Assembly (NCBI GenBank): GCA_976226885.1
Contig: OZ320316.1
Location: 94,922,001 to 94,986,000 of the forward strand
Length of the DNA stretch: 64,000 nt
Direction: 5' to 3'
Source of the DNA: Iphione sp. A-MEVVRFRX5
Taxonomy: Eukaryota
Every line of letters begins with the position of its first letter. Position 1 is the stretch's first letter. The position numbers and the translations under genes are program-made. Of the stretch, positions 2,786 to 24,469 are shown piece after piece. The notes under the pieces were generated by a model that worked only from the letters and a program-made list of their open reading frames with translations, ran no database searches and was not told the DNA's origin.

Positions 2786-2956
2786 GGACAGAGCCCGAGC
2801 TCGAGACAATCAAGAAGTGTACGCCCCTGTACGGCCAGCCGTCCTGGTGGGGGGAGGAGCTACACGAGGAGGAGGAGGAGCTGAAGGATGCTGCGGCTGC
2901 CAGTCAGCCGCAGGCCACGCCCACCGCCACGCCAAGCCATTGTAATCATCTGCCTG
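2786..2956 (+). CDS. CEP170: CEP170-like, first exon visible in window (gene is 5'-partial; FHA exons upstream)
   Basis: Acceptor ttttgtatttcgcag|, donor |gtaag at 2957, phase 1-1. Encodes TPLYGQPSWWGE, the hallmark CEP170-family motif just after the FHA domain. Confidence 0.9.
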
Positions 2957-3227: not shown

Positions 3228-3760
3228 ACAGAGACCGGCGGCCCGGTGCGGAGCGCACGGGCGCTGAGCGACCCACCTCTTTGGCGCTCGAGCGGCCGGG
3301 CGGCAGCGAAGGTAGCGCGGACACCGTCGATGCCGACGATATGAGCAAGTACAAACAGGACCCGCGCTACGCCGCCCTCCACATGGACCCCCCGCAGCGT
3401 GACGGTGATAAAAACCAAAACGGCGGAGGCGGAAATGATAGCCCACCAGAATCGGAAGTGACCACCGGAAGTGATCACCATCGGCAGCGCCGATCGTCGC
3501 CATCGGGCGTGCACACGCCGCCGGAGAAGGACGTGAGCCCACCGCCAGCGTCCGACGACAAATCGACGAGCGCGAAATCAGGCCCGATGGCGTTCACTAT
3601 TGACCTTGGTGACGACATGGGAGGGACGCCTAAACTCAACATGAAGAACAGTCTAAGCGAATTCCTCCCTCACAAGGTCAGAAGGTCATTCCGTTCAAGG
3701 TCGGCTAAGGGCAGCAGGAAGGGAAGCGAGGAGAAGGAGGACTCTCCTGCTAGCGGAAAG
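3228..3760 (+). CDS. CEP170: CEP170-like exon
   Basis: Acceptor tttttctcgtctctgagcag|, donor AAG|gtaatg, phase 1-0. Open frame DRDRRPGAERT...RPTSLAL...MAFTIDLGDD...SGK, in phase with both neighbours. Confidence 0.85.
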
Positions 3761-4228
3761 GTAATGGAGCAGTAAGAATTCACGAGAAGACAATTATTGG
3801 GGCATAATTACTCAGATATTAAAGAATTGACATCTAGCAAATATAACTCAATGGTGATCTTTATTTAACGCATATTATTTTTCACTTCCCTCACCTCAAA
3901 CAGCAGTTTTTCTGCAAAAAGAAAGTAGGGCTTTAGTACTCTCATGTAAGTTAATCCTCGGTTATGTGTTGACATTCAGACAGTGATTTCAGCCTTTCCA
4001 GTATGTACCAAACCTCTGCACACCTGTCATTATATACTCTTTGTGTAAATATAGTGAAAGATATACATGTATTTACTCATTTGTATAGTGTTCTTGATGT
4101 CAACCTTTGCACTTTTTGTCCAGCAGTCTGTCAGTATTGTTATTGGAGTTGTGTGTGTGTTTATGCTTGTATGTGTGGTATATTTCACATCCACGCATGT
4201 AATATATGTCTACTTATTAATTTTGCAG

Positions 4229-4361
4229 GCGTCAAGGGATGGCTCGCCGATGAGACACGCCAGATCAGAGGCTCAGTACCATTCTGATGGTGGCCAGAAC
4301 TCTGCGGTCTCCAGCGACAACGAGGACATTAGTATACGAAGTGACACAGTCACAACAAGAG
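4229..4361 (+). CDS. CEP170: CEP170-like exon
   Basis: Acceptor ttaattttgcag|, donor G|gtgagt, phase 0-1. Encodes ASRDGSPMRHARSEAQ...SDTVTTR. Confidence 0.85.
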
Positions 4362-5904
4362 GTGAGTTCAGGCTTGTCGACTGACAAGTATACATATATA
4401 CACACAATACATACATACATAAGATTATCTCAATATATGCGGTTCCCCATGTATGCACTGCCCAGATTCACGTTTTATAATTTGATAGCACCTTCAGGGC
4501 CTGCACATGGTGCCCATGGTGCCTTTATTTATATCCTTGTCCACCTGAAGTAAGCTAGGCAATATATAACTGACAATGTCTCAAAGTGTCTGATTAGCTT
4601 TAGGTCACCGATCTACTTTCATGAGATGTTTGAATAGCATTGGTGTTATCAACTCGTGCTTATAATTAAACTCCTAATGTACCCTAATATATAGATGCTC
4701 CCTGATTGAATATTCGCCCGTGGCCACATGCAGGCTGAAGCCGTATATTACTCCGTACTTACGTATGTCCCTCCCTTCTCCCAACAATGGTAGTGGACCG
4801 AAGGTGAGGTGGCGTATCTCCCTGTTTCCTTTTGTATGAAAGCTAACCCCCTTCTACCCCTCTCACGCAGAACTCGTCTCAGGTCAGGGTATTTCCTTTG
4901 GCCTGATGTTTATGGAGGCTGATGTACCTCCTCCACCTCCCATGTTTACCTACAATCTCCTCAGTGGTAGGTAAAGGGGTAATAGTTGTAGTGGAGTGTC
5001 CCATTGTAGGAGCAGTATCTACATGCACAGTGTACAGGGATTTCTAACTACAGTGTGTCTTTCTGTGCTTCCATGTACTAAATTGTGCATTGATTGTCGC
5101 TAAGAAAAGGGCTTGAGATCAAACGATTAGATGTAGAAACACTCCACAGCTCTAGCAGTAGGTTCTCGTAAGTAAAAGTGTCTCCTTTGCTAATATTTTC
5201 ATTGTAAAAAGTTCGTCTGTTTTCTAACAAGTTCAGGTAAGATCAGGTCCGAGGGAGTACAATACTATTTACGTTGATCAACCACACAACATATCTAGTT
5301 GCGTAATATCACTATTAGTATTATAACTTAATTACTTAGGAGACTTTGAAACACTCAGGTTTAAGATATTCCCTCTAAAAACTCTACTGATATTCCCTCA
5401 AAATACGAATACGAATTTGAAAAGATTCTTTCGTGCTATTCATTCTTTAGTGGTCTGATATGTACGCCTCCTGGCGGACTTCACTCTAATCCGTGTCCCC
5501 CTGATGAGTAAAGTTAGAACTAATATTGTACGACCGAAATGAAGATCCGTCCTTCTAACAACGGAATCATTTGTTCTGTAATGGATTCATACCGCATTTT
5601 TCATTTACCTGTACTATTCACAATATAGCTTTTTCAATTAAATTCCGTTTTAAAAAAGGAGTTTTTGTAACACGCTCAGATCCCCATTGTACTCTTGTAC
5701 TCCCAATGGTGTCATCTACAGATACTGAATGTCGAGTTTGTAACTTCTCTTTTAATCAGCTGACCTTGTTATAAAAGGTAGACAAAGAGAATCTCCTGCG
5801 CTCAGACTGATGGCAAGAATCCTGTACCTGACTGATATTTGCTATCATTATCCATCGGTACCTTTCTTCTGCTATTCCCTATAACTGTCGCACGTTGTTT
5901 CCAG

Positions 5905-6707
5905 CCAAGCGGTCGTCAAGTTCACCCCGCACTCGTTCCACCGCCCGCGTGGCTCGTCGAGAGCGGAGTCAGCAGCAGCAGCAGCAGCAGCAGGGATCGT
6001 CGACCTCCCGCACAGCGCCGGTCGACAGGACCGCCCGACTACGTCAGCAGCCCACCTCAACCACCGACTCCACCAACTACCTCATCGACCGGATGTTCAA
6101 CCAATCAACGGGCCGCACCAGGTCACGTGACCTCGGCTCAGCGAATGAGGACACGGCCTCACCGCCGACCGGAAGTCCCATCATGTCGCCGTCGAAGCGA
6201 TCCCCGCTGTCGTCGGCGGTGGCTCTGGCGGAGCGGAAGTGGGACTCGACGACCTCGGAAACGTCACGGACGCGGTCTTCGCGCAGTCGCGATATTGTCA
6301 GCAGCGTCGGCGGTGAGGACAACGTCAGCGAGTCGGGCACCTACACCATCGAGAGCGAGTTTCAGAGTAGCGAGGTCGCTAAGGCGCGACAGAGCATCGA
6401 TGCCGTCTTCGGTATCGACGATGGGCTGCCGCCGCCGCCGCTACTGCGACCATCCTGCCTGCTTGACGACGTCAATGACGAGTACACGGACAAACACAGG
6501 GGCACGTCTGACGTGGCCCAGACCAACGGCGATGTCACAGCCGGAAACGACGATAGCGGCGTCGACGACGGAGTCAAGATTGTCAACCTTTCGGGGTCAA
6601 GGACGTTTGAACGACGCCGGAAGTTGACGACTGGCACCAGCATGGACGTCGAGGTGGGCAGCACTGTAAACGATGACGAAGTCCGAGAAGACGTTGAGGA
6701 TGATGAG
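5905..6707 (+). CDS. CEP170: CEP170-like exon
   Basis: Acceptor tgtttccag|, donor GAG|gtaaga, phase 1-0. Contains DNVSESGTYTIESE...ARQSIDAVFGI, matching the CEP170 'DxxSxxGTYTIE...ARxxIDxVFGV' motif. Confidence 0.92.
5970..5993 (+). repeat. (CAG)8 coding poly-Gln tract
   Basis: Eight CAG units in frame within exon 5905-6707. Confidence 0.95.
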
Positions 6708-7384
6708 GTAAGATTTCCGAATACAGTCGATTGTAGCTTATCTGTGGTTTGTATGGCTTTACGTCCCCGGTCACCAAATGATGTCCGTTGGTGTGTAAGT
6801 GTGGCTTTCTTGGTTGCTGGCTGTATTCAGGGGCAGCAGAGTGCACTCTCTCGATTGTCTTTATATCAACTACAGATACAACACCTTTCCTTTGAACCAT
6901 CTCTCATTCTTCAGGAAGTGCACGCCCAGTATGTCTGTTAATACCTTATATATCTGCAGCTCATCTTTGAATAAAGTGAGCTGCGTCAATGCTGCGTCAA
7001 CAAACAAACATCTATCAAAAAACGTAAATGCTGCTTGTTGTTATACCTCCAAATACTAAATGAACCAGACCAACAAGTTTACTGTCTGAAAGTGATTTGT
7101 TCCATAACGTTAAACAAACCGTCAGCTGACACAGAGAACATACTGACTACAAGCCGTAGACGCGACCTCATACAAACGACATAAAAGGCTATGTGCACTA
7201 TGCTGTCAATGATACTGCTGGCAGCCGGTCAGTGTATGTGTGGAGGGCGTGGTCCTGTCAGCTTGTGTGTAGGACGTGAACGGAATGATCTGTCACCTGT
7301 CGCCTCCAGCATGTTTGTATCTTTTGATTGGCATTGGTTTTTCGTTCATTTTAGTTCCTAGATACAAGAAAAATACTTTCAAAT

Positions 7385-7385
<1 letters not shown>

Positions 7386-7412
<27 letters not shown>
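7386..7412 (+). repeat. (CAG)9 intronic microsatellite
   Basis: Directly visible. Confidence 0.95.
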
Positions 7413-7415
<3 letters not shown>

Positions 7416-10400
7416 TAGCACAAACATAACAAAGGAAGCTACCAAATAATTTTAGTCGCGAGAAAAAATGACATAATAGATGTTCATGGACAGTTTATTT
7501 ACTAACATTGATATTACAACACATAGGACTTTTTTTGTGTGAAAAATGTCTCAGTCTTCAAAACTACCCATATTTCTCAATATATGATAGCTACATGAAG
7601 TACATGAAGTAATTTTTTTCACTTACCCATATACTTTTATCAGATCATTCATAGAAGCTCACATGCACATTTGTAGTATATTTTTAGCAGGGCTAGGGGG
7701 GGGGCAGCTTAGAAATTAGCGTACCCTCGACACTCTATATAAATCAGCATGGAATATAGACTTAACCTAAATGTAGCCCCGGTGCCTATTGGTGTAAGTC
7801 TAGATTACGCCGCCAGAAAACTAGACCTTCTAGTGATACTGAGATAAGAAACGTTAAGGTTTTCCTGGCTGGAGCTTCAGGCCAAATCAGACCAGCCAGG
7901 CTCCGAGAGGATGCCAACTGGCTTATGCTACGGGACTGGCCGTGATAATTTGAGAATAACACGGGTCGAGGGAAGTACAAATCTTTGCAGTTAATGTACT
8001 CTGTTCAGGGTTTCTCACCCTTTTTCTTTCTCTCTCTTTCGTCTCTGTTTTCGTCTCTCTGGTCTCTTTCTATCCAATTTCTGTCTGACTTCTTTCTTCC
8101 GTGGTTTTGACTTTGATTTTAAATCTCCATATCACGGCCTTTATTTTATGATATTCTCTCAGCTCGCTTAGAATCTCTGGTGTTCTGTGTCTCTATGGAA
8201 AGGCCAATCAGTCAACCTGTGTCTCCCTCTTTGCAAGCTGTCTCTGTATCAAATGCAGGCAGCTCGAGTCATTCGACACACTATTAGTCGATAAGTATGA
8301 TCTCCAACATGTCCCATATCGAGGGTTCATTGTATATTTGCCAATCCCCTCAGAGACATCGCGAGACGTGGTACATAGAGGGTCTTGTACATTCGGGCAT
8401 TCCCTCTCCTCAAGTTGACATGGCAGTAGTATGTGTGTGAGTCTGTGTGCGCATGCGTGCGTGCGTGCGTGTGCGTACGCGCATGTGTGTGTGTCTTAAA
8501 ATTTATATGAGCTCATTTACTGCAGATATGTCAGATATAATTAGATGTATGAGGTTCATATCTATGGTCCCACCCTCACATCCATCTACGTAGCTGTAAG
8601 CGGGGACTCCCTAGGCAGGAGTGTTTGTATGTGGGTCTGGCAGTACGACTCAGAGGTGTAGTCCGTTTGGACTACATTGTAACCTGGAAGGCTTACTCCG
8701 CCCGGTCTCTGATTGGTTAGTGGCCAACTTGTGGCTCTCTCGCTGTTGGTTCCTTACAGCTGGACAGTCTTCCGTCTGCTACACGAGATACCAGTCAGGA
8801 AGGTACGGATCAACGTACCGGGACTACTCGTTCCGAATATTTCGAGTCGAAGGAAAGTGGAATCTGGAAACTGGTCTTGAATCGTAGGTCAGTTTCTGCG
8901 AGTATGACCAGGACAGCTCTAAAACAGTGGAGGCTTCTCAATTGAAGTCTTATCTGGAGGGCTAAATCTCAGAGGACATACTCCCACACTGCTACATTAT
9001 AAACTGTACATAGATACACCTGTTCGATGTAGTTCATGAGGACGATTTAATAACAGTTCCAGTTGTTTATATTACTCGGGCACAGATAGGAAACGCTTGA
9101 CTACTCTTGTGTGCATTTGATCGGGAGGGAATTCCAGCGTAGGCGACTCACACAAGAACTCCGATTTTGCCTACTTTAGGTTAGATAACAGACACATTAT
9201 TGTCATATCGACTGAAATGACACTGTGGATTATTCCTGTATGCCTAAGGAGTAGAGGTTTACAGACGCCCGTTACTATGCCTCGGTGAAATAGTGCGCGT
9301 TCACTGCAGAAGCGAAATCCCCCCTGAGGAGGAGGAGGACTCGGAAAAGCGTAGCCTTACAACCACTACGCATCGATTAAATACCATTCTCTCACAGAAG
9401 TTTACTAGATTAATCTCCCGCCATGAGATTTTATCGTGTGTATTTATTCTCCAATACTAACCAAGCATAGAGTTCAAGGACTGTGATAAGGCTCCGGAGT
9501 TGGATCCAGGGATCGTTGGTATGGACCCCCACGAGTGCTGGGATCAGGAGGTCCTTATCAATGTGAGCGATAATTTGATAATAGAGGAATCAGTCCATTG
9601 GCATATCTGTCAACGCAACACTGGCGCTGACACCCGCAGATCTGTCCGAGCTGGTGTAGAGAGTATTTGACCATTTGTAGGGCGGTTCCAGACGTTGTGG
9701 GCTACCTGTAAAAGCGTATACATATATCACCACGTGAATGGATCTTAGGATTTACTAGGTCTTTGGAATGCTAAATATTTAAAGAAGAGAAAACCAGAGA
9801 AGCGTACATTTTACCTACTTGACGTGTGAAAACCTGTTGAACTCCCCTGTAGCTACAGGCAAGGTTTACCAGCCTATGCCTTGATACCGTGGTTATTTAC
9901 CATGGAAAGATCTGACTAGTGAAGTCGGTTGGGCCTCGTGTATAGGTATTAACGTTACAAATATCCATTTCTCTCACAATTATTTTACGAACTCCTAGAA
10001 GACCAATACGGAGGATTACTCCTAACGGAACATAGCATTCACTCTCAGCAAGAAAATCTCCAAAGGTCTCATCTCCTCAACAAGGATCACCATGATGATT
10101 GGTAATTGATAAAGATGAAATCTCATAGAAATTACCCAAGACTGACAAGAAAACTAAAGTGAAGTAAAACAGGTAACTACAATATACCGCGACCATAATG
10201 CTTCTAAAGACCCCAACTAACAGGATGAAAGGAATCTCGTCTGGAAACATATTTCTGCGGGTAGGTGAAAGTTGTCTGATATATATTCAGTTTTCTTTTG
10301 CTTTTATTTTCAGTTCCTGATTTTAGTGATTGTTTGTCACTGAATTACACGTAATACCGACTAGTGATTCAATGCGATATAGGCAAATGATGACAGCTCG

Positions 10401-11029
10401 GTTGTCTATGCTCAGACTATACACGTGCACAAGCCACTGTCCGTTTCTTTAGACGATAAGTTCGTTTTATATCAGCTGGAACCTTGAAAACTCACCTCCC
10501 AAAATAAGCATACTGCTTAGGTTTAGCGACAATTTAAACTTCAGCATACTGTCTCTGTATCACTACACCTATTTTGCCCAGCACATGGACTGAAATAGAC
10601 CAAATTATACCACAGGGATCTTGGTATTGCTTAGGATGTCTATAAGTAATGCGAACTCTTTATTCTGGATATACAGATACACTGTATACTACCTCTGTTT
10701 GTGGCACCTATTATAAAAGCATACACTCATGTGTATATCTAGTGTGGTAATCCTGTACGGCAAAGCTTACACAAGAATGAATGGAAGAGCCACAGCAGGC
10801 TCAGCACACGAGGCGGTAGTAGTTCTGGTTGTTGTAGCCTTTCCTTAAGTCAATAAAGACAACAGAGGCCCGCAGGCAAGCCGTTAAGGAAACATTGACA
10901 TACCAAACACCAGCGAGGTGAGATCTGCGGTTGGGGTGTGGAAGATGACCTTCAGGGGCCTCGGAAATTCAAGCCAAACTTGTACTGCTGGGCCTCATCG
11001 TGGCAGGAGGTGGTACAGTGGAAGGACGG

Positions 11030-11310
11030 AGAGGGACATATTTATGTAGTATATATAATAGAGAACATAGGAGAATAGTAGAGAATAGTGTAGAAATGAC
11101 TGAGGTACTAACAGACAGCAGGCAATCAGAAAAGGTGCAGGAAAGAAAGAGATGTAGAAGATGAGAGAGATTAAAGGAGAGGTAATAACAAGCAACAGAG
11201 AATAGAAAGTAGAGGAGCCCTCATAGAGAAAAAAAGTACTGCAAGAAGACAGGATGGAATGCGACGAAAAGCGCAAGGGGGAAAACGACGTGGTCAAACT
11301 AAAAACAAAG
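11030..11310 (+). repeat. Purine-rich low-complexity tract
   Basis: A/G-dominated + strand; source of the spurious ORF 10995-11318(-). Confidence 0.7.
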
Positions 11311-14029
11311 GAGGCCAAGTTTCACTGACGCAAAAGTAGACATAGACGGTACGGAAGGAGGCGCAGGATGACATCGAAAAAGAGCTGCGTATGCAACCCG
11401 AACAATATTGTGTTTACAAAACAAAACCTGCCACTGGCTTGCACTGCCTCACCAACCGAGGCACCTGGCTCCTCACAGCCAAAAAGAATCTGAAAATGTT
11501 GCCCTAATATCTCTAAATCAGTAGTATGACATATATGCTGGAAGGGCGCCCCGCTTTACAAGTCACCTTTCACTGTGATCTTAGATATATTTTCTTTAGA
11601 GATCATGATTCAAACCTTATTGTTGACAGGTTCTCCCGACACTCCCTCGGTCCTTGTCGTAAAATTAGATTTGTACAGCAGACTTCAGTCGCTGTATAGG
11701 TGGTGTTATGTTCCTTCTCTACCCTGGAGGGCTCTTGCCTTTGGCTTGTTGTTATTACTCTTTACTGATTGCTACCAATGAGTGAGTGTAATACTCATAA
11801 GCAGCGTATGTAGGTCCCCCTTTGTAGAGGCTAGTTAGTGTTCTAAATGGCACCTGCAGTAGGTAATTTGAAGCAGTCATTTTAAGGAGTACTGCAGTAG
11901 TGAATACGAGACAAAATTTGACAGATGTAGAACCAGAAAAGGGGACCCAAGGTTCAATGGAACACGTTCACAAAGTACTGAAAATGCTGGAAGTATGGTT
12001 ATCGGTTATATGAGACATTTGATGACTCACTTAATGGGGACATAAATATATGGGGGCAGTCAAAAGCAAAGCATTTAGCTAGGGCATCATGTGACAAGTC
12101 TGATAGATTACCAATTAAAAACCAAGATTAGCACGATTAATCTGCCCACCGAGGAAGAAGAACATTTAATTTCAATTCTAAAGTGACTTGTGAAGGATTT
12201 CAATAAATAATTATAACACTAGGTTTGTAACCTGGGAGTTCGCCATGATCTGTCCCCTGCCCTTTCATGACTGTCTATTCAAGAAAACGTGGTTTAAAAT
12301 GGCCTAGCATTTTAGAACACCCATCAAAACTGGAGTGCAGCTGCCCATAGTTTGGAGGAAACTGTAAAGGAGAGGCACCTTTTTGCTAAGATTCCAGAGG
12401 ACATACTCATAAGTATGACACAATTTAGGTAAACAGTTTATTCTGCTTGTAATTACGCTATGCATTAACAAATCCTGTATTAGTGTCATATTCACATCCT
12501 TACAGTAACTGTACTGTTTGTCAGTTAATATCGATTGCAAATCTCATGTTGTTTGTAGCATTGTTTGAAAGGAAGATATTGTTTAGTGTAAATACACATG
12601 TGTATATTTATATTATGTATACCTTACAATTTAGGTGTTAATGAACCCTGTGAAAATAGTTGTGACCCTAGTACCAGGTATTTAGTAAATGTTAACTATA
12701 CACATATATTCCTGCCAGTCCCCAAAGAAAGAAAATGAATGTCTTCTAAGGTATCACCATCGCTTCATTCAGACCCCAGATTGTAGCGCAGCAACAATAC
12801 GCATTACTAAAATGAAAGAAAACAAACGACCTTTTTCTTAACAATCTTTTGTACCCAGCAGATGATCTAGGATTAAGTTTTGACTACTCTGTCCACCGAC
12901 CTTTCTACCCAGCTCCCTTCCTCTGGAACTGTTACCGTCCTGGCCCACTTGAACCTTGAGCATTTAACACTGAAGTACATTTACACTGTATCGTCACAAG
13001 TTCCTTATGCTACTGCTGCCACCTGTTGTCACGAAAGTGCACTATAGTCACCTCCATGTACCTCTCTCATATGTGACATCATATCCGCCTGACGTGACGT
13101 TTGACCACCAGTGGTTTGTCTCACCTTAGTTGTTTCCTTTCTTCTTTCTCTCCTAGTGCGTGCTGTTCTAGGTTTAAGGATTTTTTCTCCGTGTGGTGTT
13201 AATAGGAGTGTTTATGAGGTGTGGACTTCATTCTGAACGTATGAAGTAAACTTTGGAGTGTTTTGGACAGTCTAGTCTGGTGTAGATACGTTGTAGTTGT
13301 TTTGGAGCAATAGTTTTGATGCGCAGCAACTTATTGTCACATTGTCTTAGTGCAGTTGATGTTCTCTCTATATACTGCTTATTGACGCTTATAAAACACC
13401 ATTCTGATTTGTGAAAACACATAATAACGTTATACATGTATTATGAGTGATCTGAAAAACCTAACCGGGCGCAAGTTTACTACTAATATGTAACTCTTCG
13501 TTAGCCTACATCAGAAATAAATTGTTTATATTTACATTGATATGTGCTATATCATTGCATTCTTCTCAATAACCTGATTCCCAACCCACTGTTCATATCC
13601 CCATTACTAATCTCTTCTGATTGTAATACACTTCACCAGTACACTACCAATTTAGTAGGTGTCCATTTTTTTAAACAAAAGCTGATCTCCGGTCATTCCA
13701 TGAAGCATTCGAAAAAGGTTTTTCAAAATTGTTCCTTTAAGTTCAAAGTTTTTGAAAACATCATTAATTCAGAAAGAACAAACCGCGCTGATATTCTGAA
13801 CCATTACGATGTATGGACATAGCATCCTACTATCTACAATAACTTTCCGTGCTGAATTTCTTGCGCTAATACCAACTACATTTGCGAATAACTCGAACTG
13901 CTTTCTACCACCCTTCCCCGACCTACATGCACCCTTCAGTTAAGTTATCATCTTAACGTGCCCGGTCCGGTCTTGGTAATAGTTTCTCTTCCTCCACCTC
14001 ATATGTGGCAGCCGTTTTGTTTCGTGCAG

Positions 14030-14116
14030 GACTACAAGATTGTAGAGGTGCTATTTGACGGGGTATGGGCTTCCCCTAAACTGACGCGCCGCACCCCTGA
14101 GGTGCACTCTTACCAA
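14030..14116 (+). CDS. CEP170: Probable cassette exon of the CEP170-like gene (29 aa)
   Basis: Acceptor ttttgtttcgtgcag|, consensus donor CAA|gtaagt, phase 0-0, open: DYKIVEVLFDGVWASPKLTRRTPEVHSYQ. Skipping it preserves the frame. Confidence 0.6.
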
Positions 14117-16140
14117 GTAAGTTTTCGCCGGCTCCGCGCACCCCGCCATCCCCACGAAAGGCGACGTAAACCTTGACGTCATTCGGTGACGCCAAAATGA
14201 CGTCGTAATGTCGTCATAACGTCAAGATTCCTTCGTGGCGTAATGTTCCGTCAGCAACGTGGCGCCATGATACATGGCATCACCTGCTGCCGCCGCCACG
14301 TGGACACATCTTGATGTCATGATAACATTAACTTGACATTTGATTGATGCCTCAGTGACGTCACAGCGATGGCATTGTGACATCATATTCACCTCCTCCA
14401 CCCCCAGCCGCCGCCTCGTTGCACATACGAGGGAGTCGTTAATATGTTGTCTTCGTTATGTGATTTTCAAAGAAATATTCATCACTCCAGCGGTCGGCAT
14501 CAACTTTACGTCTCATCAAAAGTACTGAGGGCACTCACGGATAAAAGTGTACCCAAATCCAAACTGATTCTATCATACTACTCGAGTTCATCCCGTTCCT
14601 TACCACTTTTGCGGCATGTTTTGGCGTATTGAACCAAATAATTACATGATCTCTCACATTGCTTCTTGTACTTTTGATGAAAGTTGATGAAGACCTTTGA
14701 ATTTTATAACAAGACAACTATGACTGTATCATTTCCTCCAGTCTTTGGAATTTGCCGAATTTGGAGGCGGCCAAATTTCATTCCAAGAAGTCTCAATCTT
14801 TCGCTTCGGTTTGCTCTTCAGTGTTGTACCATAGCTCTGGTTGTCTTTCTGTCATCTCAAGCACTTGGCCAAATAGGCATTTGCATGAAGCATTGACGTT
14901 ATAACGTCAGTTACATATTTTCCGTCTTGTACGTTTCGTCGTTCATGTTTCCCATGAAGAATCTTATTACTTTTTCCCATCATTTTGAACTACGATTTTT
15001 TCTACTTTTTATTGGACTCTTTTGTATTGTTTTGTCTCACTTCTCCTTTCTGTCAACTGAGGTTTTCTAGTCAGTTGTATATGGATTTGATGTTAGAAAG
15101 TAGCAATGCATATATATATACGCATACCTAACTTACGTAGAGTAAAAGCGTATCTGTGTGTCCATGATAGTCATTAGTTGTATAGCTAGATTACGAATAA
15201 CATTATCAAGGCAAAGTCAAAGCCCACCATGTAAATAGCAAATCCACATACATACACAAAGAACTGACAGCTGCAAACATACAAATGCGTATGGAAATTC
15301 AAAACAGTTTTGATTTTATTCAGTAGTATTACTACATCTCAATATATTTATTACATGGTGATTATTAATGGATGTATACTCCAATGCTACCTATTTCGTT
15401 CTTATTGTACAAAGAAGTAAATCTAGTAGATAAAAGTACTCGGCATATTTATACTGAATAAAGTAGATAAATAAATGTATAGTTGTTTAGTATGGCTAAA
15501 CGGTGGCAGCACTTTAGGACTGCGTCAACATAGAATTGAATGAAGAAAAACTGTACCTATTCATAGAATACTTATAGAAATAAAACTGCATCTATAAGCG
15601 TCCTGCATTCTAAGGAATAAATCACACATTTGCGTTACGATCCAGACTATTGATTGTGGTGAATGGCACTGTGCTACGTTTCTCTTAACCTTCTTTCCGT
15701 TAAGTCTCTTTGTTCATCAGTTTTAACGCCATATTGAACATCATGTAATCTGCTGCCTTGGCAGCTATGAGGTTTTATGCCTGCCATGATGAACTCGGCT
15801 TGTTGTACGATGTGCATGCTGGGAATGATATGCTTTCTTTGTTGTAAATGTTGTAAACCACCCGAAACACTTTTTATTATTTGTATATACATGTAGATAC
15901 AGATACATGTTGTCACAAAGTATGTTTTTTATTTGATACATATGATATCATGTTATTTGGATCTTTATATATACATGTATTCATGTTTTAACATGTCTCT
16001 AAAAGGCCTGATATCCCCCATTGCAGCTGCTGCATGCTCTATTACAGATAATACTGAAATACTACCACAAACAGAATGATTAATATCTGGAATCTCATTA
16101 GTATTTGAAATCTCATTAGTAATTTATTGCTTGGTCACAT

Positions 16141-16236
16141 AGCAAGGTTCATTGTTCATTCTTATAGAAGAATTTGTTTTAAAAACTTAGCAAGGTTCAT
16201 TATTCATTCTTATAGAAGAATTTGTTTTAAAAACTT
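16141..16236 (+). repeat. Tandem duplication, 2 x 48 bp
   Basis: agcaaggttcatt(g/a)ttcattcttatagaagaatttgttttaaaaactt twice, with one mismatch. Confidence 0.95.
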
Positions 16237-16512
16237 TTAGAAACTTGAGTCATGAGGGTTTCTTATCTTGATAAATGTATAAAAGATATTTGTCTGTCCT
16301 GACTTTGCTTCACTGGTTATTCGTTTGTTCTGTGGGTCAAAGTGTCTTACCGAAATAGTGGTGTCATAGACCTAATATTTAAGGAACATCGTCTCCGACA
16401 CACTGGGTTTAGTTCAAAACGTTGCTTTTGGGACGAATGCCGTGACTCTGAGTACTTGAGAGGCCCTGGGTGTCGTCAATATTTAATTGAGTATCCATCT
16501 CCTTTCCCTCAG

Positions 16513-16648
16513 CCGGAAGTAGTGGCCACTCAACCCACGGAAGACACGCCCAAATGGGTCAGTCAGTGGGCCACGCTGGCCACCCAGAAGACCTTTGTCA
16601 AGTCACCCACACTCACTACCAATGCACCAATCTATGCTGGCCGCAGTG
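16513..16648 (+). CDS. CEP170: CEP170-like exon
   Basis: Acceptor cctttccctcag|, donor G|gtaagt, phase 0-1. Encodes TPKWVSQWATLA, matching the CEP170 'WVSQWASLA' motif. Confidence 0.92.
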
Positions 16649-17354
16649 GTAAGTCGACATCATGTATTTAGTAGAACTTTTGTTTAATAACCGATCGCCT
16701 CATCGCATAACGATGTCCAAATGACGCTACGACATTGTTTACATTCTGCTGGTTGACGGGGGCTCTGCTATGGCAGCGTCACTGTGATGTTACTACGTGG
16801 TCAGCTAACTCAGTATTGAGGTCAACTACACTGTATTTATCCTGACTGTTGTGGTTGGTGGAGGATACCTTTGCGTGTTTATCAAAGGTCTACAGGGGCA
16901 CTTCGTTACTCACACTGGCACAGTGGCAAGCTAATACATGTATTCATGTCTAAGATACATATCGCTTACAACTTCATGATAACTTGAAATAATACACGTA
17001 ATGCAGGTTTTGTAACACGAGATGGAAGGCTGGTTCCCATCGTTGTTCCAATAATTCACAATCTTATAATAATTCATCTCCGCGGGACAGTCATGTGAAA
17101 ATATCATGTTTCTCAGTGTCACCATCGATGCGCCTGTGCTGGCTACCTGGTGAATCCCCAAGTAACTAATGTGACAGAGCTAGCATAAAGATAGTCTGCT
17201 ACCTTCTTATGACAGATTCCCTCAACGTGGACTGTTTCCCCTAATAACCTCTCAAGTAGTTATCTATTTTATTGGTAGTGATTGTTGATTACATTCCTCT
17301 TTAATGTTGCTCTCCTATTGTATTAGGTCGACATGTAATGTTTTTTTCCTCCAG

Positions 17355-19870
17355 CTTCTGACGTCAGTGACGTACGATCGTCGTCAGAATCAGCGCGTGA
17401 TTTTACGCCAGCGCCTCCGCCGGAACGTTCCTTCAGCGGACCGGGCCGGAAACCGCGGGGGTCGGGCCGGAAGCTGCCGACGCCGCCTGTGAAATCAAGC
17501 TGTTCATCGACGCCGATGTCTCCCCGTTCTACGACCGCTCCAAGCAGTGAGGCGCTAAGTGAGACACCAGAGAAGGACGCTAGCGGAACGGGAAACGCCG
17601 TGATGACGGAAAGCGGAAGTAGGTTTGTGACGGAGAGCGGGAGTGGCTTCGTGACCGGAAGTGGTCGAGGTTTTGTGTCAGGGACTGGGAGTAGCTTTGT
17701 GTCGTCGACAGGAAATGAGCGCGGCGGTGTTCGGAATCGCCCGACAGCGTACATTGACCCACGGCGTCCTGACAATATACCTCTAACCTCTGCGTCATCG
17801 TCGTCCTCAGCGACAGCGGCGGCAACGGCCACCGCCACCACGACGGAGGCAATCGACGACATCCTGACTCATGGCGTCACAAGTGACGTAGTTACCTTCG
17901 TCCACGACGAGATGTCGGAAAGTATAACGACGGAAATGACCGACAGCGCGACCAGCAGCCACCTATCGGCCAGTATGGGAGAAACAAGGGACGCCGAGGG
18001 GGAGGAGGACGAGGAAGAAGAGGAAGAGCTGTCGGCGCTCGCCTCACGCTTACGCACGGTGCTGCGGGGAAAGCGATCCTCACCGGAAGTCGTAGTGTGT
18101 CCCGTCAGTGGAAATGCTAATGGCGATGCTCTGACGTCACTACGTGATACAGATGACGTCATACACGCCATGCCAGTGAGGATGGACATCAGTCTGGATG
18201 ACCTTCCCAAGGACAAGTCTGTTAAACGTACCACTGCTACTGAAAATGGAAGTGATGACACGCCACTTCCGCCACAAACACAGCCGCAGCGGAAGAGTAC
18301 GGAGCTGTTTATACCGTTGCACGACGACGATTCCGACTCGGACGGCTCCAACCGGGCCCTGATGAACGGACATCCCCCAAGGCTCAAACCTAAGCCTCGT
18401 CTTTTCAAGAGTCACAGCACCGACACCCGGAAGCCGCCATCGACTCGACCTTTCCTGTCACGAGAACAGCGGGAACGGGAACGCGCCAGTTCCACCGGAA
18501 GTGCTGGTTCAGAGCGGTCATCCTCGTCGGCAGTGAAAGAGTCTCCACATGCCGGGGCGACCTCCCGCGACGGCGGAAAGCCGACTTCGACTATAGCGGG
18601 TCGGGGATCACCTAAGATCAAACCACCGCCATCGTCGGCATCTGCCGCAGCCACCGCGTCGCGAGCGAGGAGTGTGCAAAAACAACCGCCGCAACAGCAT
18701 CATCAACCACAGAAACAGCACAAGTCGGAGCCACAGAATCGTCATCAGAATCAACAGAAGGCGGCCCCGTCCACCCCGCACAAGATCCCTAAAGACGCTA
18801 CCTTTGTGTGTACAGATTCGGGTCGGGGCAAGTCCTCCGTGACCTCACTGACGTCCATACCCTCCCTGGACCTCAACAGCTCGTTTGGTTCCGACCTCCA
18901 CAGCGAGTCGGAGAGTATAGTCAGCTCGAGCACAGATTACAGCGGTACACTCAGTCCGCGCCTGGCCCGCCGTGGCTCCAAGGGCAAAGCTCCCATGAGT
19001 ATGACCCGCCCTAACCGCGCCTTCGCCTTACGTCGGGCCCGCCTAGACGGGGAAGAGCCACCAACACCACCCACCCCTCCATCATCGTCGTCAGCCACCA
19101 CCAACTCGACCAGCGCCGGTCGATACAGATCCAACGTGAACCGAGCCCGCCCTAACAGCGCCGGTGCTAGGGACACGCCTCGCCCGCGCCCGTCGTCAGC
19201 GCGTGACTCGGGCCGCTCCGACGTCGGCGTCAGGGCTGGCGGGCCGCGAAGTCGGGAGAGTAGCGTGGGCCCGCCAAGAGCTAAGAGCACAGGGCCAAGG
19301 TTGGACACGGGCCGCCTGACGGCCAGGCATGAAAAGAAAGGGAGTACTAGTTCGACAGGGGGGAGTCAGCCAAGGAAGTCACCTGCTCCACCCCCCTGCT
19401 CGTCATCATCGATGAGACACAAATCCGATCGGCTGTCTTCCACCGGAAGTGGGGGGACGCGCTCCAAGCCATCAAGCCGGTCAAACTCACCGCAGACGCC
19501 CAGCCGACGCTCAGAGGAGTATTCAGCCTGGAAACGCCGGAAGAGTTATGATCCGCGTCAGGCGGTCGTCAATGCCAAGGTCAAGGCGCGCGAGCTGCGG
19601 AACAGCACTTCCGATTCGCAGTCGGCGACCGCACCGGAACGTTCGCGGTCGGCGGGGCCGCTGGCGCGGGTCTCGTCCACAGTCTCTTCAGTGTCCAGCG
19701 AGGAGTCGGCCTTTCTGCAGGAGGAGCTTCAGTCGTACGCCGGAGGGGGACGCCACCACCGCGCGTCAGACGCCATCAGCCAGGTTAGCAACGCCGTCTG
19801 TCACCAGGTGGACGCCATGTCACGCAGCATCGAGAGCGACGACGCCTTCGTTGATGTCGGCGGCAAACTG
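17355..19870 (+). CDS. CEP170: CEP170-like giant exon (2,516 nt; S/T/P/R-rich disordered region)
   Basis: Acceptor tttttttcctccag|, donor CTG|gtgagt, phase 1-0. Uninterrupted frame including GRKLPTPP, RPNRAFALRRARL and AWKRRKSYDPR. Confidence 0.92.
17605..17700 (+). repeat. Coding 24-nt tandem repeat x4 (TxSGxGFV-like octapeptide)
   Basis: Units start at 17605, 17629, 17653 and 17677 and encode TESGSRFV TESGSGFV TGSGRGFV SGTGSSFV. Confidence 0.85.
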
Positions 19871-20557
19871 GTGAGTGAAACATATTTGGTATAGAAGAAG
19901 TTTAACAAATTCTCTAGTTGACAAATGCCTGTTCCCAAAGCATCTGGCATGAGACTTGAAAACACTAATGTACACGAAATCGTCTCTTGTTAAATATAAT
20001 TTTTTGTCAATTTTTAGATGTATATTTATTTGATCAGAACAGTAATCATGACAGGTCCAAGTTAAGTGCTAGACGGACATGAATCGTCATGTCTTCTACC
20101 GACGTTGTACATCTTTTTATGCAATACGAATTGGGTCATATGCAAAGTAAACAGACATTCTAAGCTGTCATAAGGGAAAAGCCCAGAGTTACAAAAAATG
20201 AAACAACTGTTTACAAGTGCAGGTCTGTGTTGTCTTAACGTTAAATTTGGTACATTTGATCTACCTGCCTGTTCCAACATTATACCTGTCTTTAATTTTC
20301 TGACCTTAAGGTAGTGAACCGTTTACATGTATTTTCCAGCAAGCATTAATATACATATATGTACAATTAATTAATATGTTATTGTTTGGGGAGATAGGTA
20401 CTGATTATTAACAAATATATAACTAATATATTCACCAATATATTTACAAGTTCTCAATCACTCCTAAATCATGTTCTAATTGCTTCTATATATTTAGTTA
20501 ATTAATATATTTTACTTTCTCCTGGGTATATATGAGTTCAATTGTAAACATTTTCAG

Positions 20558-20599
20558 CTACCAAGACGGGGTCGCCTACCAAGGAACAAACTCCCTAAG
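20558..20599 (+). CDS. CEP170: Possible 42-nt cassette exon (LPRRGRLPRNKLPK)
   Basis: Acceptor aacattttcag|, weak donor AAG|gtttcc, phase 0-0. Basic peptide in an AT-rich intron. Confidence 0.3.
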
Positions 20600-21826
20600 G
20601 TTTCCATTTTGTCATAATTTGATGATGATTCTGTCATTCTTTGGTCTTAGCCGTCAAAACCAAAAATTCATTTCCTTTTAAATTGTTTCTCCCTTGACAG
20701 TTATTGTTGTGATACTGGCTGTTGTTTATATGATAAGGCTAAATAAGTTTGTTGTTCGGTTCAACCTCCGTTTGACATAGACTTGATTCAAACAAGCCCC
20801 TTAACCCGGGGCGACATATTGGGACTAAAGAGAGAAGACTAAAGAACTGTGGTAGATGGTTGCGAATATATGTACTCTTTTAGTGCAGGTTAAGTGGAAA
20901 ATGAATCACTGATTGAATTACCTAATGGGATAAATTCCCTGTATACTTCTACATGCAGCAATATCTGTAGCAGATATTAGATGTTCTCGATTACTTTTAT
21001 CATTCATGATTCATGAAGCAGTGGATGAAATGAAGCGAAATGAAAATTCGCACAGTATTCTTCATTTTGCGCAAGGTCAGTGATTCGTTTTCGGAAAAAT
21101 CTGGATTTAAAAGGTCTGTGCAGTCCATTACTTCTGAGTACACCCAATGTTGCTCTCAGCTGTAACCTTATTTTATGAGTGTACATATGTTGTACTCCCA
21201 TGTAAGTGTAGGGTCCCTGGCCTAAGACATGGGTTGAGGTTATTGTTTAGTGAGCCATACCAGGTATTTGATCAAATTTAACCATTTCACGTTAGAGGTC
21301 TCTGCCGTTGTAAGGGTGATGTTATAGTAGGGTTATTGTGGAAGAGGAAGGGACCAGTTGAAGAATTCGAATATAAAGTAAGAAACAAGTACAACTAAAT
21401 GCTTGAAGAGAAGCAGTTATTCCGATTATTACTTTGATAATCTTGCACGGTCAGCCACCACGGTGAAAGACCAAGCTTGATTACGAAGGTATGTTCATCA
21501 GAAGGGTTTTTGATATAGTTTTTTCGATAATTTGTTACCTCTCCGTTTTTAGCACACAGTGTGTACATCTTAAATCATTGGAAAAGGTGCGAACATATAG
21601 CTAAGTTTGTGAAGAAACTTGGCGCTGTGCACTGGCTTCAAACTTTTATCTCTGTGTCTGTGGTCCGACAATCATATTTCAAAGTCATAGGACCATACAG
21701 ACAACCTGACCCGAACAGTCACATGACCAGAACCACAGACTTATTGTATGTAGAATCGCGTGACCTGTTGAAACGTCATATTACCTCAGAAAAGTCGAGG
21801 CGTGACCAGAGACGCTGTGCTTTCAG

Positions 21827-22000
21827 GGGTATGGATCAAGGTCACCGTTTCCGGTAGGCCGATCAACGTTGTCGGCATTTAGCGTGCCGCGTACACGTTC
21901 TGTGCCGCTCTCTCTGCGGTCGCCGCCACCGCGCTCGACCACTTCCGGTCGGGCCGGAAGTGTGCGTCGGGCGGCTCTTGAGGCGACCGCACCGCTGGAG
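21827..22000 (+). CDS. CEP170: Probable cassette exon of the CEP170-like gene (58 aa)
   Basis: Acceptor gctgtgctttcag|, donor GAG|gttggt, phase 0-0. GC-rich open frame GYGSRSPFPVGRSTLSAFSVPRTRSVPLSLRSPPPRSTTSGRAGSVRRAALEATAPLE, compositionally like the neighbouring exons. Confidence 0.65.
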
Positions 22001-24383: not shown

Positions 24384-24469
24384 TCCTATGATACTGTCAT
24401 GGTCAACTCCATCTACCAGCTGTCACTCAAGGTGCGCACGCAGACGGACAAGATCATGGAGAAGATGAG
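24384..24469 (+). CDS. CEP170: CEP170-like exon, start of conserved C-terminal domain
   Basis: Acceptor gctttttttttcag|, donor AG|gtcagt, phase 0-2. SYDTVMVNSIYQLSLKVRTQTDKIMEKMR resembles the CEP170 C-terminal 'FSRKIRQSIDKTAGKIR' segment. Confidence 0.88.

What the first reader, a model, noticed from the sequence alone, without database searches (positions are those of the whole stretch)
3465..21962. ETS/GABP motif CCGGAAGT occurs 10 times inside CEP170-like coding exons, in all three frames and on both strands
Seen in sequence: CCGGAAGT at 3465, 6169, 6617, 16513, 17655, 18083, 18495, 19443 and 21954, and ACTTCCGG at 21941. It is read as ACC-GGA-AGT (TGS), CCG-GAA-GT (PEV), CGC-CGG-AAG (RRK), GCC-GGA-AGT (AGS) and antisense ACT-TCC-GGT (TSG). 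I spotted only three copies (30229, 55500, 61412) in the other ~59 kb. A rough calculation for ~5.1 kb of ~60% GC exon on both strands gives ~0.2 expected. Established: CCGGAAGT is the class-I ETS (GABPA/ELK) consensus, and binding is sensitive to CpG methylation. Inference: frame independence points to a DNA-level constraint, such as exonic TF sites or local protection from gene-body methylation/CpG decay, overlaid on an intrinsically disordered protein region.
Basis: partly seen in the sequence, partly recalled or inferred. Interest (0 to 1): 0.72.

Follow-up and report, generated by a model that had tools for sequence, protein, structure and literature searches.

The report
Exact ETS-site word repeated in exons
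One centrosome-protein gene of this invertebrate carries ten exact copies of the DNA word that ETS-type gene regulators bind, all inside its protein-coding exons; this is far more than chance or codon usage gives, but the copies are absent from related species and their reader is unproven.

Summary
CCGGAAGT sits at all 13 stated places. Ten lie in phase-consistent exons of a single-copy CEP170-like gene (9 sense, 1 antisense).

- **Enrichment:** synonymous-codon permutation expects 0.54 sense copies and never exceeded 4 in 5000 trials. A dicodon-preserving shuffle, partly circular, gives 3.1, with P(>=9) = 0.0005.
- **Rank:** it is the most over-represented 7-, 8- and 9-mer of the CDS.
- **Codons:** five of six Thr-Gly-Ser tripeptides use ACC-GGA-AGT.
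- **Genome scale:** three of only 249 genomic copies of CCACCGGAAGTG lie in this gene.

So the cause acts on nucleotides, not on the protein.

- Frames and strands are skewed (6/2/1 sense copies by frame; 9:1 by strand).
- One-mismatch variants are not enriched.
- The introns hold no copies and no decayed relics.
- Three related species have 0 to 3 copies, none at the same places.
- Several copies lie in species-specific insertions.
- Three or four copies share 16-18 nt with transposon termini.

Best reading (about 0.35): recently gained, exon-embedded class-I ETS sites. Rivals are an mRNA-level element and neutral copying. No run with RNA data was listed.

The parts
3465..3472 (+). CCGGAAGT copy in exon E2, read ACC-GGA-AGT (TGS). 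It is preceded at 3452 by the near copy TCGGAAGT; together they form a 13-nt near-tandem repeat (CGGAAGTGAcCAC / CGGAAGTGAtCAC).
   Evidence: It lies where the window has about 57 nt more than the L001-species orthologue.
6169..6176 (+). CCGGAAGT copy in exon E4, TGS frame. It shares the 12-nt word CCGACCGGAAGT, in inverted orientation, with the 21941 copy.
   Evidence: Its 17-mer context is unique in the genome.
6617..6624 (+). CCGGAAGT copy in exon E4, read CGC-CGG-AAG-T (RRKL).
   Evidence: Its 17-mer context is unique in the genome.
16513..16520 (+). CCGGAAGT copy forming the first eight bases of exon E7, read CCG-GAA-GT (PEV). The Pro-Glu is conserved in relatives.
   Evidence: Its 17-mer context is unique in the genome.
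17655..17662 (+). CCGGAAGT copy in exon E8, TGS frame, inside a window-specific insertion of about 40 aa that holds a short tandem peptide repeat. The stretch 17653-17669 is perfectly complementary (17 nt) to 21934-21950 and equals the subterminal word of a MITE family.
18083..18090 (+). CCGGAAGT copy in exon E8, PEV frame, in an indel-rich segment. Its context ACCGGAAGTCGTaGTGT matches 16 of 17 nt of the terminal inverted repeat of a roughly 17.5-kb element.
18495..18502 (+). CCGGAAGT copy in exon E8, TGS frame, inside a window-specific insertion of 5-6 aa. It shares the 14-mer TTCCACCGGAAGTG with the 19443 copy.
   Evidence: the 14-mer occurs only 11 times in the genome
19443..19450 (+). CCGGAAGT copy in exon E8, TGS frame, in a window-specific indel and replacement zone.
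21941..21948 (-). The only antisense copy (ACTTCCGG on +, read ACT-TCC-GG, TSG). It forms the 5' arm of the hairpin in cassette-type exon E9.
21954..21961 (+). CCGGAAGT copy in exon E9, AGS frame, forming the 3' arm of the hairpin. It shares the 14-nt word GGTCGGGCCGGAAG with the conserved GSGRK codons of E8 (near copy at 17467).
21915..21991 (+). Palindromic 3' half of exon E9. Both arms carry the motif plus a GCGACCGC block, collinear with the MITE 3' terminus.
   Evidence: The fold of 21827-22030 has z = -2.27. Arm-to-MITE gapped scores give P = 0.001 and 0.046.
2786..2956 (+). Exon E1 of the CEP170-like gene (TPLYGQPSWWGEE block). No motif copy.
3228..3760 (+). Exon E2, disordered. GC 0.62, CpG o/e 1.18.
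4229..4361 (+). Exon E3.
5905..6707 (+). Exon E4, disordered. CpG o/e 1.30.
14030..14116 (+). Exon E6, 87 nt and in frame. It is very highly conserved: 100% amino-acid identity with the L001 species.
16513..16648 (+). Exon E7.
17355..19870 (+). Exon E8, 2516 nt, mostly disordered. GC 0.61, CpG o/e 1.14. It holds four motif copies and three CRE words.
21827..22000 (+). Exon E9, 174 nt and in frame, cassette-compatible. Its 5' half is conserved; its 3' half is the palindrome.
24384..24469 (+). Exon E10. Weak CEP170_C match (E = 5e-4, below the curated cut-off).
24857..25011 (+). Exon E11.
29253..29503 (+). Last exon E12, ending at the stop codon. It aligns to the C-terminus of full-length relatives.
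30229..30236 (-). ACTTCCGG on the + strand, 726 nt after the stop codon and before the first polyA-like hexamers (30388, 30750). It would be a second antisense copy in the mRNA if the 3'UTR reaches this far.
   Evidence: inference; no RNA data

Best explanation
The ten copies form a real, species-specific family of one exact word, (A)CCGGAAGT(G). It was written into the weakly constrained, indel-tolerant, CpG-rich disordered exons of a single-copy CEP170-like gene.

At least two copies clearly arrived within small in-frame insertions. Three or four match transposon-terminal sequence. Others share 11-14 nt with each other. The word is held at nucleotide level: identical codons are used for the same tripeptide, and the same word appears in other frames.

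The most likely reader is a class-I ETS transcription factor (GABP-alpha/ELK/ETS1 type) binding the DNA. The copies would then be exon-embedded transcription-factor sites ('duons') in what look like hypomethylated, CpG-island-like exons. They could act on transcription or on co-transcriptional processing of the very long exon.

**Shown:** the excess, its nucleotide-level nature, its exon restriction, its recent origin, and the match to the ETS optimum.

**Inferred:** that a protein reads it, that the protein is an ETS factor, that it reads DNA rather than RNA, and any effect on expression.
For: - **Excess:** 9 sense and 1 antisense copies against 0.54 and 0.02 under synonymous permutation. It is the top word of the CDS.
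- **Codon level:** 5 of 6 TGS tripeptides are ACC-GGA-AGT, and the three TGS of the orthologue use other codons.
- **Flanks:** the core plus flanks equals the class-I ETS optimum, with A at -1 in 7/10 and G at +1 in 6/10.
- **Unbiased scan:** across the whole window, the two top complex 8-mers are this word and the CRE palindrome TGACGTCA. These are two canonical promoter-factor sites. CRE also exceeds expectation in the CDS, 3 against 0.41.
- **The word is used elsewhere in this genome:** ACCGGAAGT occurs 12,999 times against 9,920 for its CpG-free reversal. The pair ACTTCCGG-N(0-30)-CCGGAAGT occurs 736 times against 9 for the control. Two unrelated mobile-element families carry the word near their ends.
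- **Exon context:** nine of the ten copies lie in exons with CpG o/e of 1.14-1.32 (E2, E4, E8, E9); the tenth opens E7 (0.45). The introns are at 0.65.
- **Strand bias:** the 9:1 bias is largely what the purine-skewed sense strand predicts. GGAA against TTCC is 45:16, and free codon permutation gives 2.3:1.
- **Genome scale:** three of 249 genomic CCACCGGAAGTG copies lie in this gene.
Against: - **Exon-only:** all ten copies are exonic. The 21.7 kb of introns hold none and no CpG-decayed relics. An enhancer has no need to sit in exons.
- **No weaker sites:** one-mismatch variants that ETS proteins also bind are at background, 7 against 5.0. This is unlike usual site clusters.
- **No conservation:** the L013 species has 0 copies. 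The L001 species has 2 sense copies, inside a conserved GRK...GRK block, plus 1 antisense. L002 has none in exons.
- **Motif not needed for CpG richness:** the L001 large exon is as CpG-rich (1.03 against 0.66 for the locus) with almost none of the motif. L002 shows a weaker contrast (0.70 against 0.44) with none.
- **Selection effect:** This weakens the argument from the word's identity.
- **No functional data:** no chromatin, methylation or binding data exist, and no run with RNA data was listed.
Confidence: 0.35

Rival explanations
1. The word is read in the mRNA or pre-mRNA. Possible readers are a sequence-specific RNA-binding protein, a small RNA with seed ACUUCCGG, or exon-definition enhancers for the unusually long exons. 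A further option is base pairing with the antisense copies in E9 (and perhaps the 3'UTR), which could control inclusion of cassette exon E9.
For: - All copies are exonic and none is intronic.
- Nine of ten are sense, and the single antisense copy pairs with a sense copy in a hairpin.
- Only the exact word is enriched and one-mismatch neighbours are not. Base pairing would require exactly that.
- Complementarity to the antisense copies extends beyond the core: 17 nt for 17653-17669 with 21934-21950, 12 nt with 6165-6176, and 11-12 nt between 19603-19613 and the 18496 and 3449 stretches. Inverted 12-mers number 12 against 1.9 expected.
- Four of eight gaps between copies fall at 412-448 nt in spliced coordinates, one of them across the E7/E8 junction (P about 0.01, post hoc).
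- One copy starts exactly at the first base of E7.
Against: - No known RNA family matches.
- No cognate small RNA or protein is known.
- There is no A after the site, as canonical miRNA sites have.
- Splicing enhancers are degenerate hexamers, not exact 8-10-mers.
- An 8-nt long-range duplex cannot compete with the local E9 hairpin; only the 17-nt one could.
- This reading does not explain why the word is the ETS optimum, nor why the palindromic CRE is co-enriched.
- The orthologous E9 shows no significant structure (z = +0.78).
Confidence: 0.25
2. The copies are a neutral by-product with no reader. Short (9-18 nt) templated insertions, template switches or captured transposon-end fragments happened to spread one word through exons that tolerate indels. 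Protein-level tolerance of Ser/Thr/Gly-rich inserts let them stay.
For: - The 17655 and 18495 copies lie in window-specific insertions, and 18083 and 19443 lie in window-specific indel zones.
- Subgroups share flanks: TTCCACCGGAAGTG twice (only 11 in the genome), CCACCGGAAGTG three times, and a 17-nt inverted pair. Mean flank extension is 1.42 against 0.72, P = 0.0016.
- The 17655 copy and both E9 arms match a MITE terminus, and 18083 matches 16 of 17 nt of another element's terminal repeat.
- Exactness fits young copies.
- The orthologues lack the copies.
Against: - The flanks beyond about 12 nt are unrelated (mean z 0.36), yet all ten cores are intact. Copy-and-decay should hit cores as well.
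- Apart from the motif there is no excess of dispersed short repeats in the CDS. The orthologues show only local tandem duplications.
- A DNA-level copying process should also have seeded the fourfold larger introns, but they hold no copy and no relic.
- Three sites have genome-unique contexts.
- The word occurs in three reading frames.
Confidence: 0.25
3. The excess comes from composition or chance: a GC- and CpG-rich, Ser/Thr/Gly/Arg-rich coding sequence with its own codon and codon-pair preferences simply throws up this word.
For: - The CDS has 61% GC, CpG o/e of 1.09 and a purine-skewed sense strand.
- The dicodon-preserving shuffle raises the expectation to 3.1 and the 6-let shuffle to 5.1.
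Against: - Every null below the motif's own sub-words gives 0.1 to 0.6, and none of 5000 synonymous permutations exceeded 4.
- Even the dicodon null gives P = 0.0005.
- The exact word outnumbers its 24 one-mismatch neighbours 9 to 7, where 1 to 9 is expected.
- The orthologous exon of equal GC and CpG content does not show the excess.
- The Bonferroni-corrected P over all 8-mers is about 1e-3.
Confidence: 0.05

Closest known systems
Exonic transcription-factor sites ('duons'; the concept is taken from my own knowledge of Stergachis et al. 2013, not read here; plant examples in PMC6790085 and bioRxiv 10.1101/085795 were seen only as search listings)
   Same: A transcription-factor consensus lies inside coding sequence and dictates codon choice: TGS is always ACC-GGA-AGT here.
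   Different: Known duons are scattered single sites of many factors, and many are reported as conserved (from my own knowledge, not checked here). Here one gene holds ten exact copies of a single word. They are not conserved in relatives, weaker variants are absent, and occupancy is untested.
Class-I ETS (GABP-alpha/ELK/ETS1) sites of CpG-island promoters and of viral or mobile-element terminal regions
   Same: The core and flanks (ACCGGAAGTG) are identical. Paired and palindromic arrangements occur. The context is CpG-rich, and CRE words co-occur in the same window. In this genome the same word also sits near the ends of two mobile-element families.
   Different: The copies are spread at intervals of about 0.4 to 0.9 kb through coding exons rather than packed near a transcription start. 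Nothing here shows a promoter.
Competing RNA pairing (docking site and selector sequences, as in Dscam exon 6 splicing)
   Same: One antisense element in an alternative-type exon is complementary to many upstream sense elements. They share a common core and the extensions vary (8 to 17 nt).
   Different: The selectors lie in ordinary coding exons up to 18 kb away, not before a cluster of alternative exons. Most duplexes are only 8-12 nt, and there is no conservation.
Short templated insertions, template-switch mutations and transposon footprints
   Same: Copies lie in lineage-specific insertions. Direct and inverted copies share 11-18 nt. There is a near-perfect palindrome in E9, and some copies match MITE and terminal-repeat sequence.
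   Different: Only one word has spread. The introns were spared, and the cores are intact while the flanks are unrelated.

Membership tests
Functional class-I ETS binding-site cluster | Sequence matches the ACCGGAAGT(G/A) optimum. | tested here: met
   Ten exact cores. A at -1 in 7/10, and G or A at +1 in 7/10.
Functional class-I ETS binding-site cluster | Occupancy by an ETS protein in accessible, unmethylated chromatin. | not testable with these tools
   No chromatin or methylation data. Only CpG o/e of 1.14-1.32 in E2, E4, E8 and E9, which hold nine of the ten copies, against 0.65 in introns; E7, with the tenth, is 0.45.
Functional class-I ETS binding-site cluster | A spectrum of affinities and no strand preference, as in usual homotypic clusters. 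| tested here: not met
   One-mismatch variants number 7 against 5.0 expected. The strand ratio is 9:1, although the purine skew explains much of that.
Functional class-I ETS binding-site cluster | Conservation of the sites in related species. | tested here: not met
   No homologous site in the L001/L003, L013 or L002 loci.
CEP170 family gene | CEP170 C-terminal domain (PF15308). | tested here: inconclusive
   Exon E10 hits PF15308 at E = 5e-4 with 19.3 bits, below the 27-bit cut-off. The relative P0029 passes it. The exons were searched one by one; the joined model was not sent to any search tool.
CEP170 family gene | N-terminal FHA domain. | tested here: inconclusive
   Full-length relatives P0033 and P0034 carry FHA, and the window exons are collinear with their residues from about 280-340 to the end. 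No FHA exon was found in the window or in the 30 kb upstream.
miRNA-type seed-site array | Exact 7-8-nt sense-strand matches in the mature mRNA. | tested here: met
   Nine exact sense copies, all exonic.
miRNA-type seed-site array | A cognate small RNA, and an A opposite its first base. | tested here: not met
   The base after the word is G in 6/10 and A in 1/10. No Rfam family matches in the locus. The genome was not searched for a small-RNA hairpin.
Exonic splicing enhancer | Purine-rich, sense-strand, exon-restricted, degenerate hexamer. | tested here: inconclusive
   The GGAAG core, the sense strand and the exon restriction are met. The 6-mer CGGAAG occurs 17 times against 3.7 expected. 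But the full exact 8-10-mer is what is enriched, which is not how enhancers behave.
Transposon-derived fragment (MITE terminus or terminal inverted repeat) | Identity to the element extends beyond the 8-mer. | tested here: inconclusive
   Met for 17655 and 21941 (17-18 nt), for 21954 (collinear blocks, P = 0.001) and for 18083 (16 of 17 nt). Not met for 3465, 6169, 6617, 16513, 18495 and 19443.

The most novel reading that the evidence does not exclude
A single housekeeping-type gene has recently acquired, mainly through micro-insertions into its disordered coding exons, a regularly spaced array (about 430 nt apart) of exact high-affinity ETS words. The array would work as an intragenic regulatory device. 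It could act on the DNA, with ETS factors holding the long exons open or unmethylated, or pacing the polymerase. Or it could act on the spliced mRNA, where the lone antisense copy in cassette exon E9 pairs with the sense copies. Either way, coding sequence would be shown to be recruited wholesale as a homotypic cis-regulatory array within one lineage.
Probability: 0.2. Interest if true: 0.7.

Novelty: new variant of a known kind. Interest (0 to 1): 0.45.

Why it matters
If the copies are read, this gene would be a clean natural case of a disordered protein region doubling as a regulatory array. Codon choice and even small insertions would be dictated by a nucleic-acid signal rather than by the protein.

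It is directly testable. Ten defined sites can be recoded synonymously, and relatives that lack the sites serve as natural controls.

If the copies are not read, the case is a caution. A statistically overwhelming motif excess in low-complexity exons could then arise from recent copying, which matters for anyone inferring 'duons' from enrichment alone.

Tried and rejected
- **Larger repeat or internal duplication:** rejected. The repeat finder output and flank alignments show unrelated flanks beyond about 12-17 nt.
- **Paralogue or gene-family effect:** rejected. The gene is single-copy.
- **General codon-triplet habit of the clade:** rejected. The orthologue codes TGS three other ways.
- **CpG decay of former intronic copies:** rejected. 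CTGGAAGT and CCAGAAGT are not in excess.
- **General dispersed-copying process in these exons:** not seen. Non-motif repeats are at background, and the orthologues show only tandem duplications.
- **Transposon origin of all copies:** rejected. Six contexts do not belong to any repeat family: three have genome-unique 17-mers, and the CCACCGGAAGTG group is near its control count.
- **Known structured RNA:** none found.
- **RNA evidence:** no run was listed for 16400-22100. Exon use, E9 inclusion and the extent of the 3'UTR rest on sequence and homology only.
- **Literature:** full-text searches found nothing on this word in coding exons.
- **Closer relatives:** none turned up in either protein search.
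- **Joined protein model:** it was used only in local statistics. Database searches were done exon by exon.
- **Masked stretch 3013-3184:** it lies in the E1/E2 intron and was left untouched.

Full report
**1. The observation**

CCGGAAGT occurs 13 times in the window, at exactly the stated places, against 1.12 expected from dinucleotide shuffles. None of the copies belongs to a longer repeat.

**2. The gene**

I built the gene model from open frames, splice signals and tblastx against three related loci. It has eleven + strand exons:
- E1 2786-2956
- E2 3228-3760
- E3 4229-4361
- E4 5905-6707
- E6 14030-14116
- E7 16513-16648
- E8 17355-19870
- E9 21827-22000
- E10 24384-24469
- E11 24857-25011
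- E12 29253-29503

All phases join without a stop until the terminal codon.

The exons are collinear with full-length relatives that carry an FHA domain (P0033, P0034) or CEP170_C (P0029). Exon E10 itself hits CEP170_C weakly. 'CEP170-like' is therefore sound, although the FHA exons were not found in the window or in the 30 kb upstream. The gene is single-copy.

All ten copies of the finding are exonic. Database searches were made exon by exon. The joined model was used only for local statistics and was not sent to any search tool. The masked stretch 3013-3184 lies in an intron and was left alone.

**3. Is it more than chance?**

The CDS is 5043 nt long, with 61% GC and CpG o/e of 1.09. It holds 9 sense copies and 1 antisense copy. 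Expected sense counts under each null:

| Null model | Expected sense copies | Note |
|---|---|---|
| Synonymous-codon permutation | 0.54 | maximum 4 in 5000 |
| Free codon permutation | 0.17 | |
| 2- to 4-let shuffles | 0.12 to 0.55 | |
| Dicodon-preserving shuffle | 3.1 | P(>=9) = 0.0005 |
| 6-let shuffle | 5.1 | P = 0.006 |

It and the 6-let shuffle keep the motif's own sub-words, so they are partly circular, and the word still passes both.

- In an unbiased scan the word and its sub- and super-words are the most over-represented 7-, 8- and 9-mers of the CDS. They rank ahead of the CAG run.
- Five of the six Thr-Gly-Ser tripeptides are written ACC-GGA-AGT, whose expected frequency from this gene's codon usage is 0.015. 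Two of three Pro-Glu-Val tripeptides are written CCG-GAA-GTN.
- The 24 one-mismatch neighbours are at background, 7 against 5.0. The exact word therefore outnumbers them where a ratio of 1 to 9 is expected.

At genome scale (1.18 Gb), ACCGGAAGT occurs 12,999 times. Seven copies in 18.5 kb compare with about 0.2 expected, which remains significant after allowing for every window of that size. CCACCGGAAGTG occurs 249 times, three of them in this gene. TTCCACCGGAAGTG occurs 11 times, two of them 948 bp apart in E8. At this gene's density, an exome of about 30 Mb (an assumed size) would hold more copies than the genome does. The density therefore cannot be typical of coding sequence.

**4.

- **Frames are skewed.** Six sense copies are read as (T/A)GS, two as PEV and one as RRK.
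- **Strands are 9:1.** This is largely what a purine-skewed sense strand predicts. GGAA against TTCC is 45:16, and free codon permutation gives 2.3:1. The single antisense copy is the partner of a sense copy in the E9 palindrome.
- **The introns are empty.** Their 21.7 kb hold no copy and no CpG-decayed relic.

**5. Relatives**

| Locus | Amino-acid identity to the window's large exon | CCGGAAGT copies |
|---|---|---|
| L001 + L003 (one contig) | about 59% | 2 sense, both GGC-CGG-AAG-T in a conserved GRK...GRK block where the window has CCGGAAGC; 1 antisense; its three TGS use other codons |
| L013 | 54% | none in 21.7 kb |
| L002 | 35% | none in exons |

A four-way alignment places 17655 in a window-specific insertion of about 40 aa and 18495 in a window-specific insertion of 5-6 aa. 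The 18083 and 19443 copies lie in window-specific indel zones. The 3465 copy lies where the window has about 57 nt more than the orthologue. The array is therefore young and not conserved.

The L001 large exon is nevertheless as GC- and CpG-rich as the window's (CpG o/e of 1.03 against 0.66 for the locus). L002 shows a weaker contrast, 0.70 against 0.44. So the motif is not what keeps CpG in these exons.

**6. Signs of copying**

Flank sharing exceeds the null, with a mean extension of 1.42 nt against 0.72 (P = 0.0016). Specific links between copies:
- The 3465, 18495 and 19443 copies share 12-14 nt.
- 17653-17669 is a perfect 17-nt inverted copy of 21934-21950.
- The 6169 and 21941 copies share 12 nt in inverted orientation.
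- The near copy at 17467 shares 14 nt with 21954.
- The near copies at 3452 and 19607 are 12-nt inverted partners.

Against copying as the whole story:
- Beyond these short tracts the flanks are unrelated.
- Non-motif dispersed repeats are at background in this CDS.
- The orthologues show only local tandem duplications.

Whatever spread the word, it did not spread other sequences.

**7. Mobile elements**

The 17-mer of the 17655 and 21941 copies is the subterminal word of a MITE family of about 500 bp. That family gives 115 hits with at most one mismatch, against 19 for the control. Both arms of the E9 palindrome are collinear with that terminus (P = 0.001 and 0.046).

Separately, the pair ACTTCCGG-N(0-30)-CCGGAAGT occurs 736 times in the genome against 9 for the control. 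Most of these lie in the roughly 210-bp terminal inverted repeats of an element family about 17.5 kb long, whose copies are about 98% alike. The 18083 context matches that repeat at 16 of 17 nt. I only observed this element and built no consensus of it.

The contexts of the other six copies are unique or near-unique in the genome. Transposon sequence may therefore account for three or four copies, not for the array.

The recurrence of the exact word near the ends of two unrelated elements, and its excess over its reversal genome-wide, suggest that something in this organism reads the word on DNA.

**8. Context**

Across the whole window, the two top complex 8-mers in an unbiased scan are the CRE palindrome TGACGTCA (14 copies) and this word (13 copies). 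CRE also exceeds expectation in the CDS, 3 against 0.41. One of those CRE words, however, overlaps a conserved Asp-Val peptide.

The disordered exons E2, E4, E8 and E9 have CpG o/e of 1.14-1.32 and prefer NCG codons. The introns (0.65) and the small conserved exons (0.45-0.67) are depleted.

**9. Weighing the explanations**

Composition or chance is nearly excluded. Three readings remain.

*(a) DNA-level ETS sites in hypomethylated, island-like exons.*
- For: the identity of the word with its flanks, the CRE co-enrichment, and the use of the word by mobile elements.
- Against: exon-only placement, the absence of weaker variants, and the lack of conservation.

*(b) An mRNA-level element.*
- For: exon-only and sense-only placement, exactness, complementarity to the antisense copies that extends beyond the core, and gaps of 412-448 nt in spliced coordinates (P about 0.01, post hoc).
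- Against: no known reader, no significant structure in the orthologous E9, and no explanation for the word's identity.

*(c) Neutral recent copying.*
- For: the insertions and the shared flanks.
- Against: intact cores beside unrelated flanks, the spared introns, and the absence of any general copying signal.

I put these at about 0.35, 0.25 and 0.25. The remainder goes to composition or chance (0.05) and to readings not considered here. No run with RNA data was listed for this stretch, so exon use and E9 inclusion rest on sequence and homology.

**10. Verdict**

The excess is real and statistically robust. It acts at nucleotide level, is specific to this lineage, and is confined to the exons of one gene. 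The idea of a conserved constraint or of methylation protection is not supported by the relatives. It is a new variant of a known kind (exon-embedded factor sites) if the word is read, and a cautionary curiosity if it is not.

Noticed in passing
L017-L036 (20 genomic copies); window 17653-17670 and 21934-21951: A MITE-like family of about 500 bp. It has short terminal inverted repeats (ATTGnnnCGGTCGC) and the subterminal word GACCGGAAGTGG(C/T)CGAGGCGACCGC at one end. It gives 115 genomic hits with at most one mismatch, against 19 for the control. No full copy lies in the window.
   Followed up: partly
L037-L039 (G000:C1 near 10.83, 10.84 and 12.34 Mb): An element family about 17.5 kb long with terminal inverted repeats of roughly 210 bp. 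Each repeat holds the palindrome ACTTCCGG-TACAAA-CCGGAAGT about 80 nt from the end. Copies are about 98% alike and number in the hundreds. The size and repeats would fit a Maverick/Polinton-type or other large DNA element.
   Followed up: partly
window 794-812, 14174-14363, 17359, 18132-18161, 27022-27178, 33614, 37216, 52181, 54593: The full CRE palindrome TGACGTCA occurs 14 times against about 1-2 expected, often in pairs or triplets. It is the top complex 8-mer of the window together with the ETS word. The clusters just after exon E6 and in the last intron look promoter-like.
   Followed up: partly
window exons E2, E4, E8, E9 against the introns and exons E1, E6, E7, E10, E12: The disordered exons have CpG o/e of 1.14-1.32 and prefer NCG codons (CCG, TCG, ACG, GCG). 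The introns (0.65) and the small conserved exons (0.45-0.67) are CpG-depleted. The L001 and L002 loci show the same contrast, more weakly in L002.
   Followed up: partly
window 14030-14116: An 87-nt in-frame exon with 100% amino-acid identity to the L001 species and 89% to the L013 species. It also scores about 56% in the other two reading frames. It is far more conserved than the rest of the gene, and CRE words lie just downstream.
   Followed up: no
window 17600-17720: A species-specific tandem peptide repeat ((S/T)G(S/R)xFV(T/S)x, four units of 24 nt) inserted in exon E8. It holds one exact and one near copy of the motif.
   Followed up: partly
spliced coordinates of the ten copies: The gaps between successive copies are 693, 448, 178, 436, 428, 412, 948 and 542 nt. 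Four of the eight fall within 36 nt of each other (P about 0.01 in a post hoc test), and one of those four spans the E7/E8 junction.
   Followed up: partly
whole window: The palindrome TACATGTA occurs 24 times against 2-5 expected, and ACATGTAT 34 times. It appears largely within AT-rich intronic stretches. Its nature was not examined.
   Followed up: no
L001 3588 and 20171 (related species): Two inverted copies of a repeat carrying TTACTACCCTCCGGAAGTGA lie in introns of the orthologous locus. Mobile sequence in that species also carries the word.
   Followed up: no
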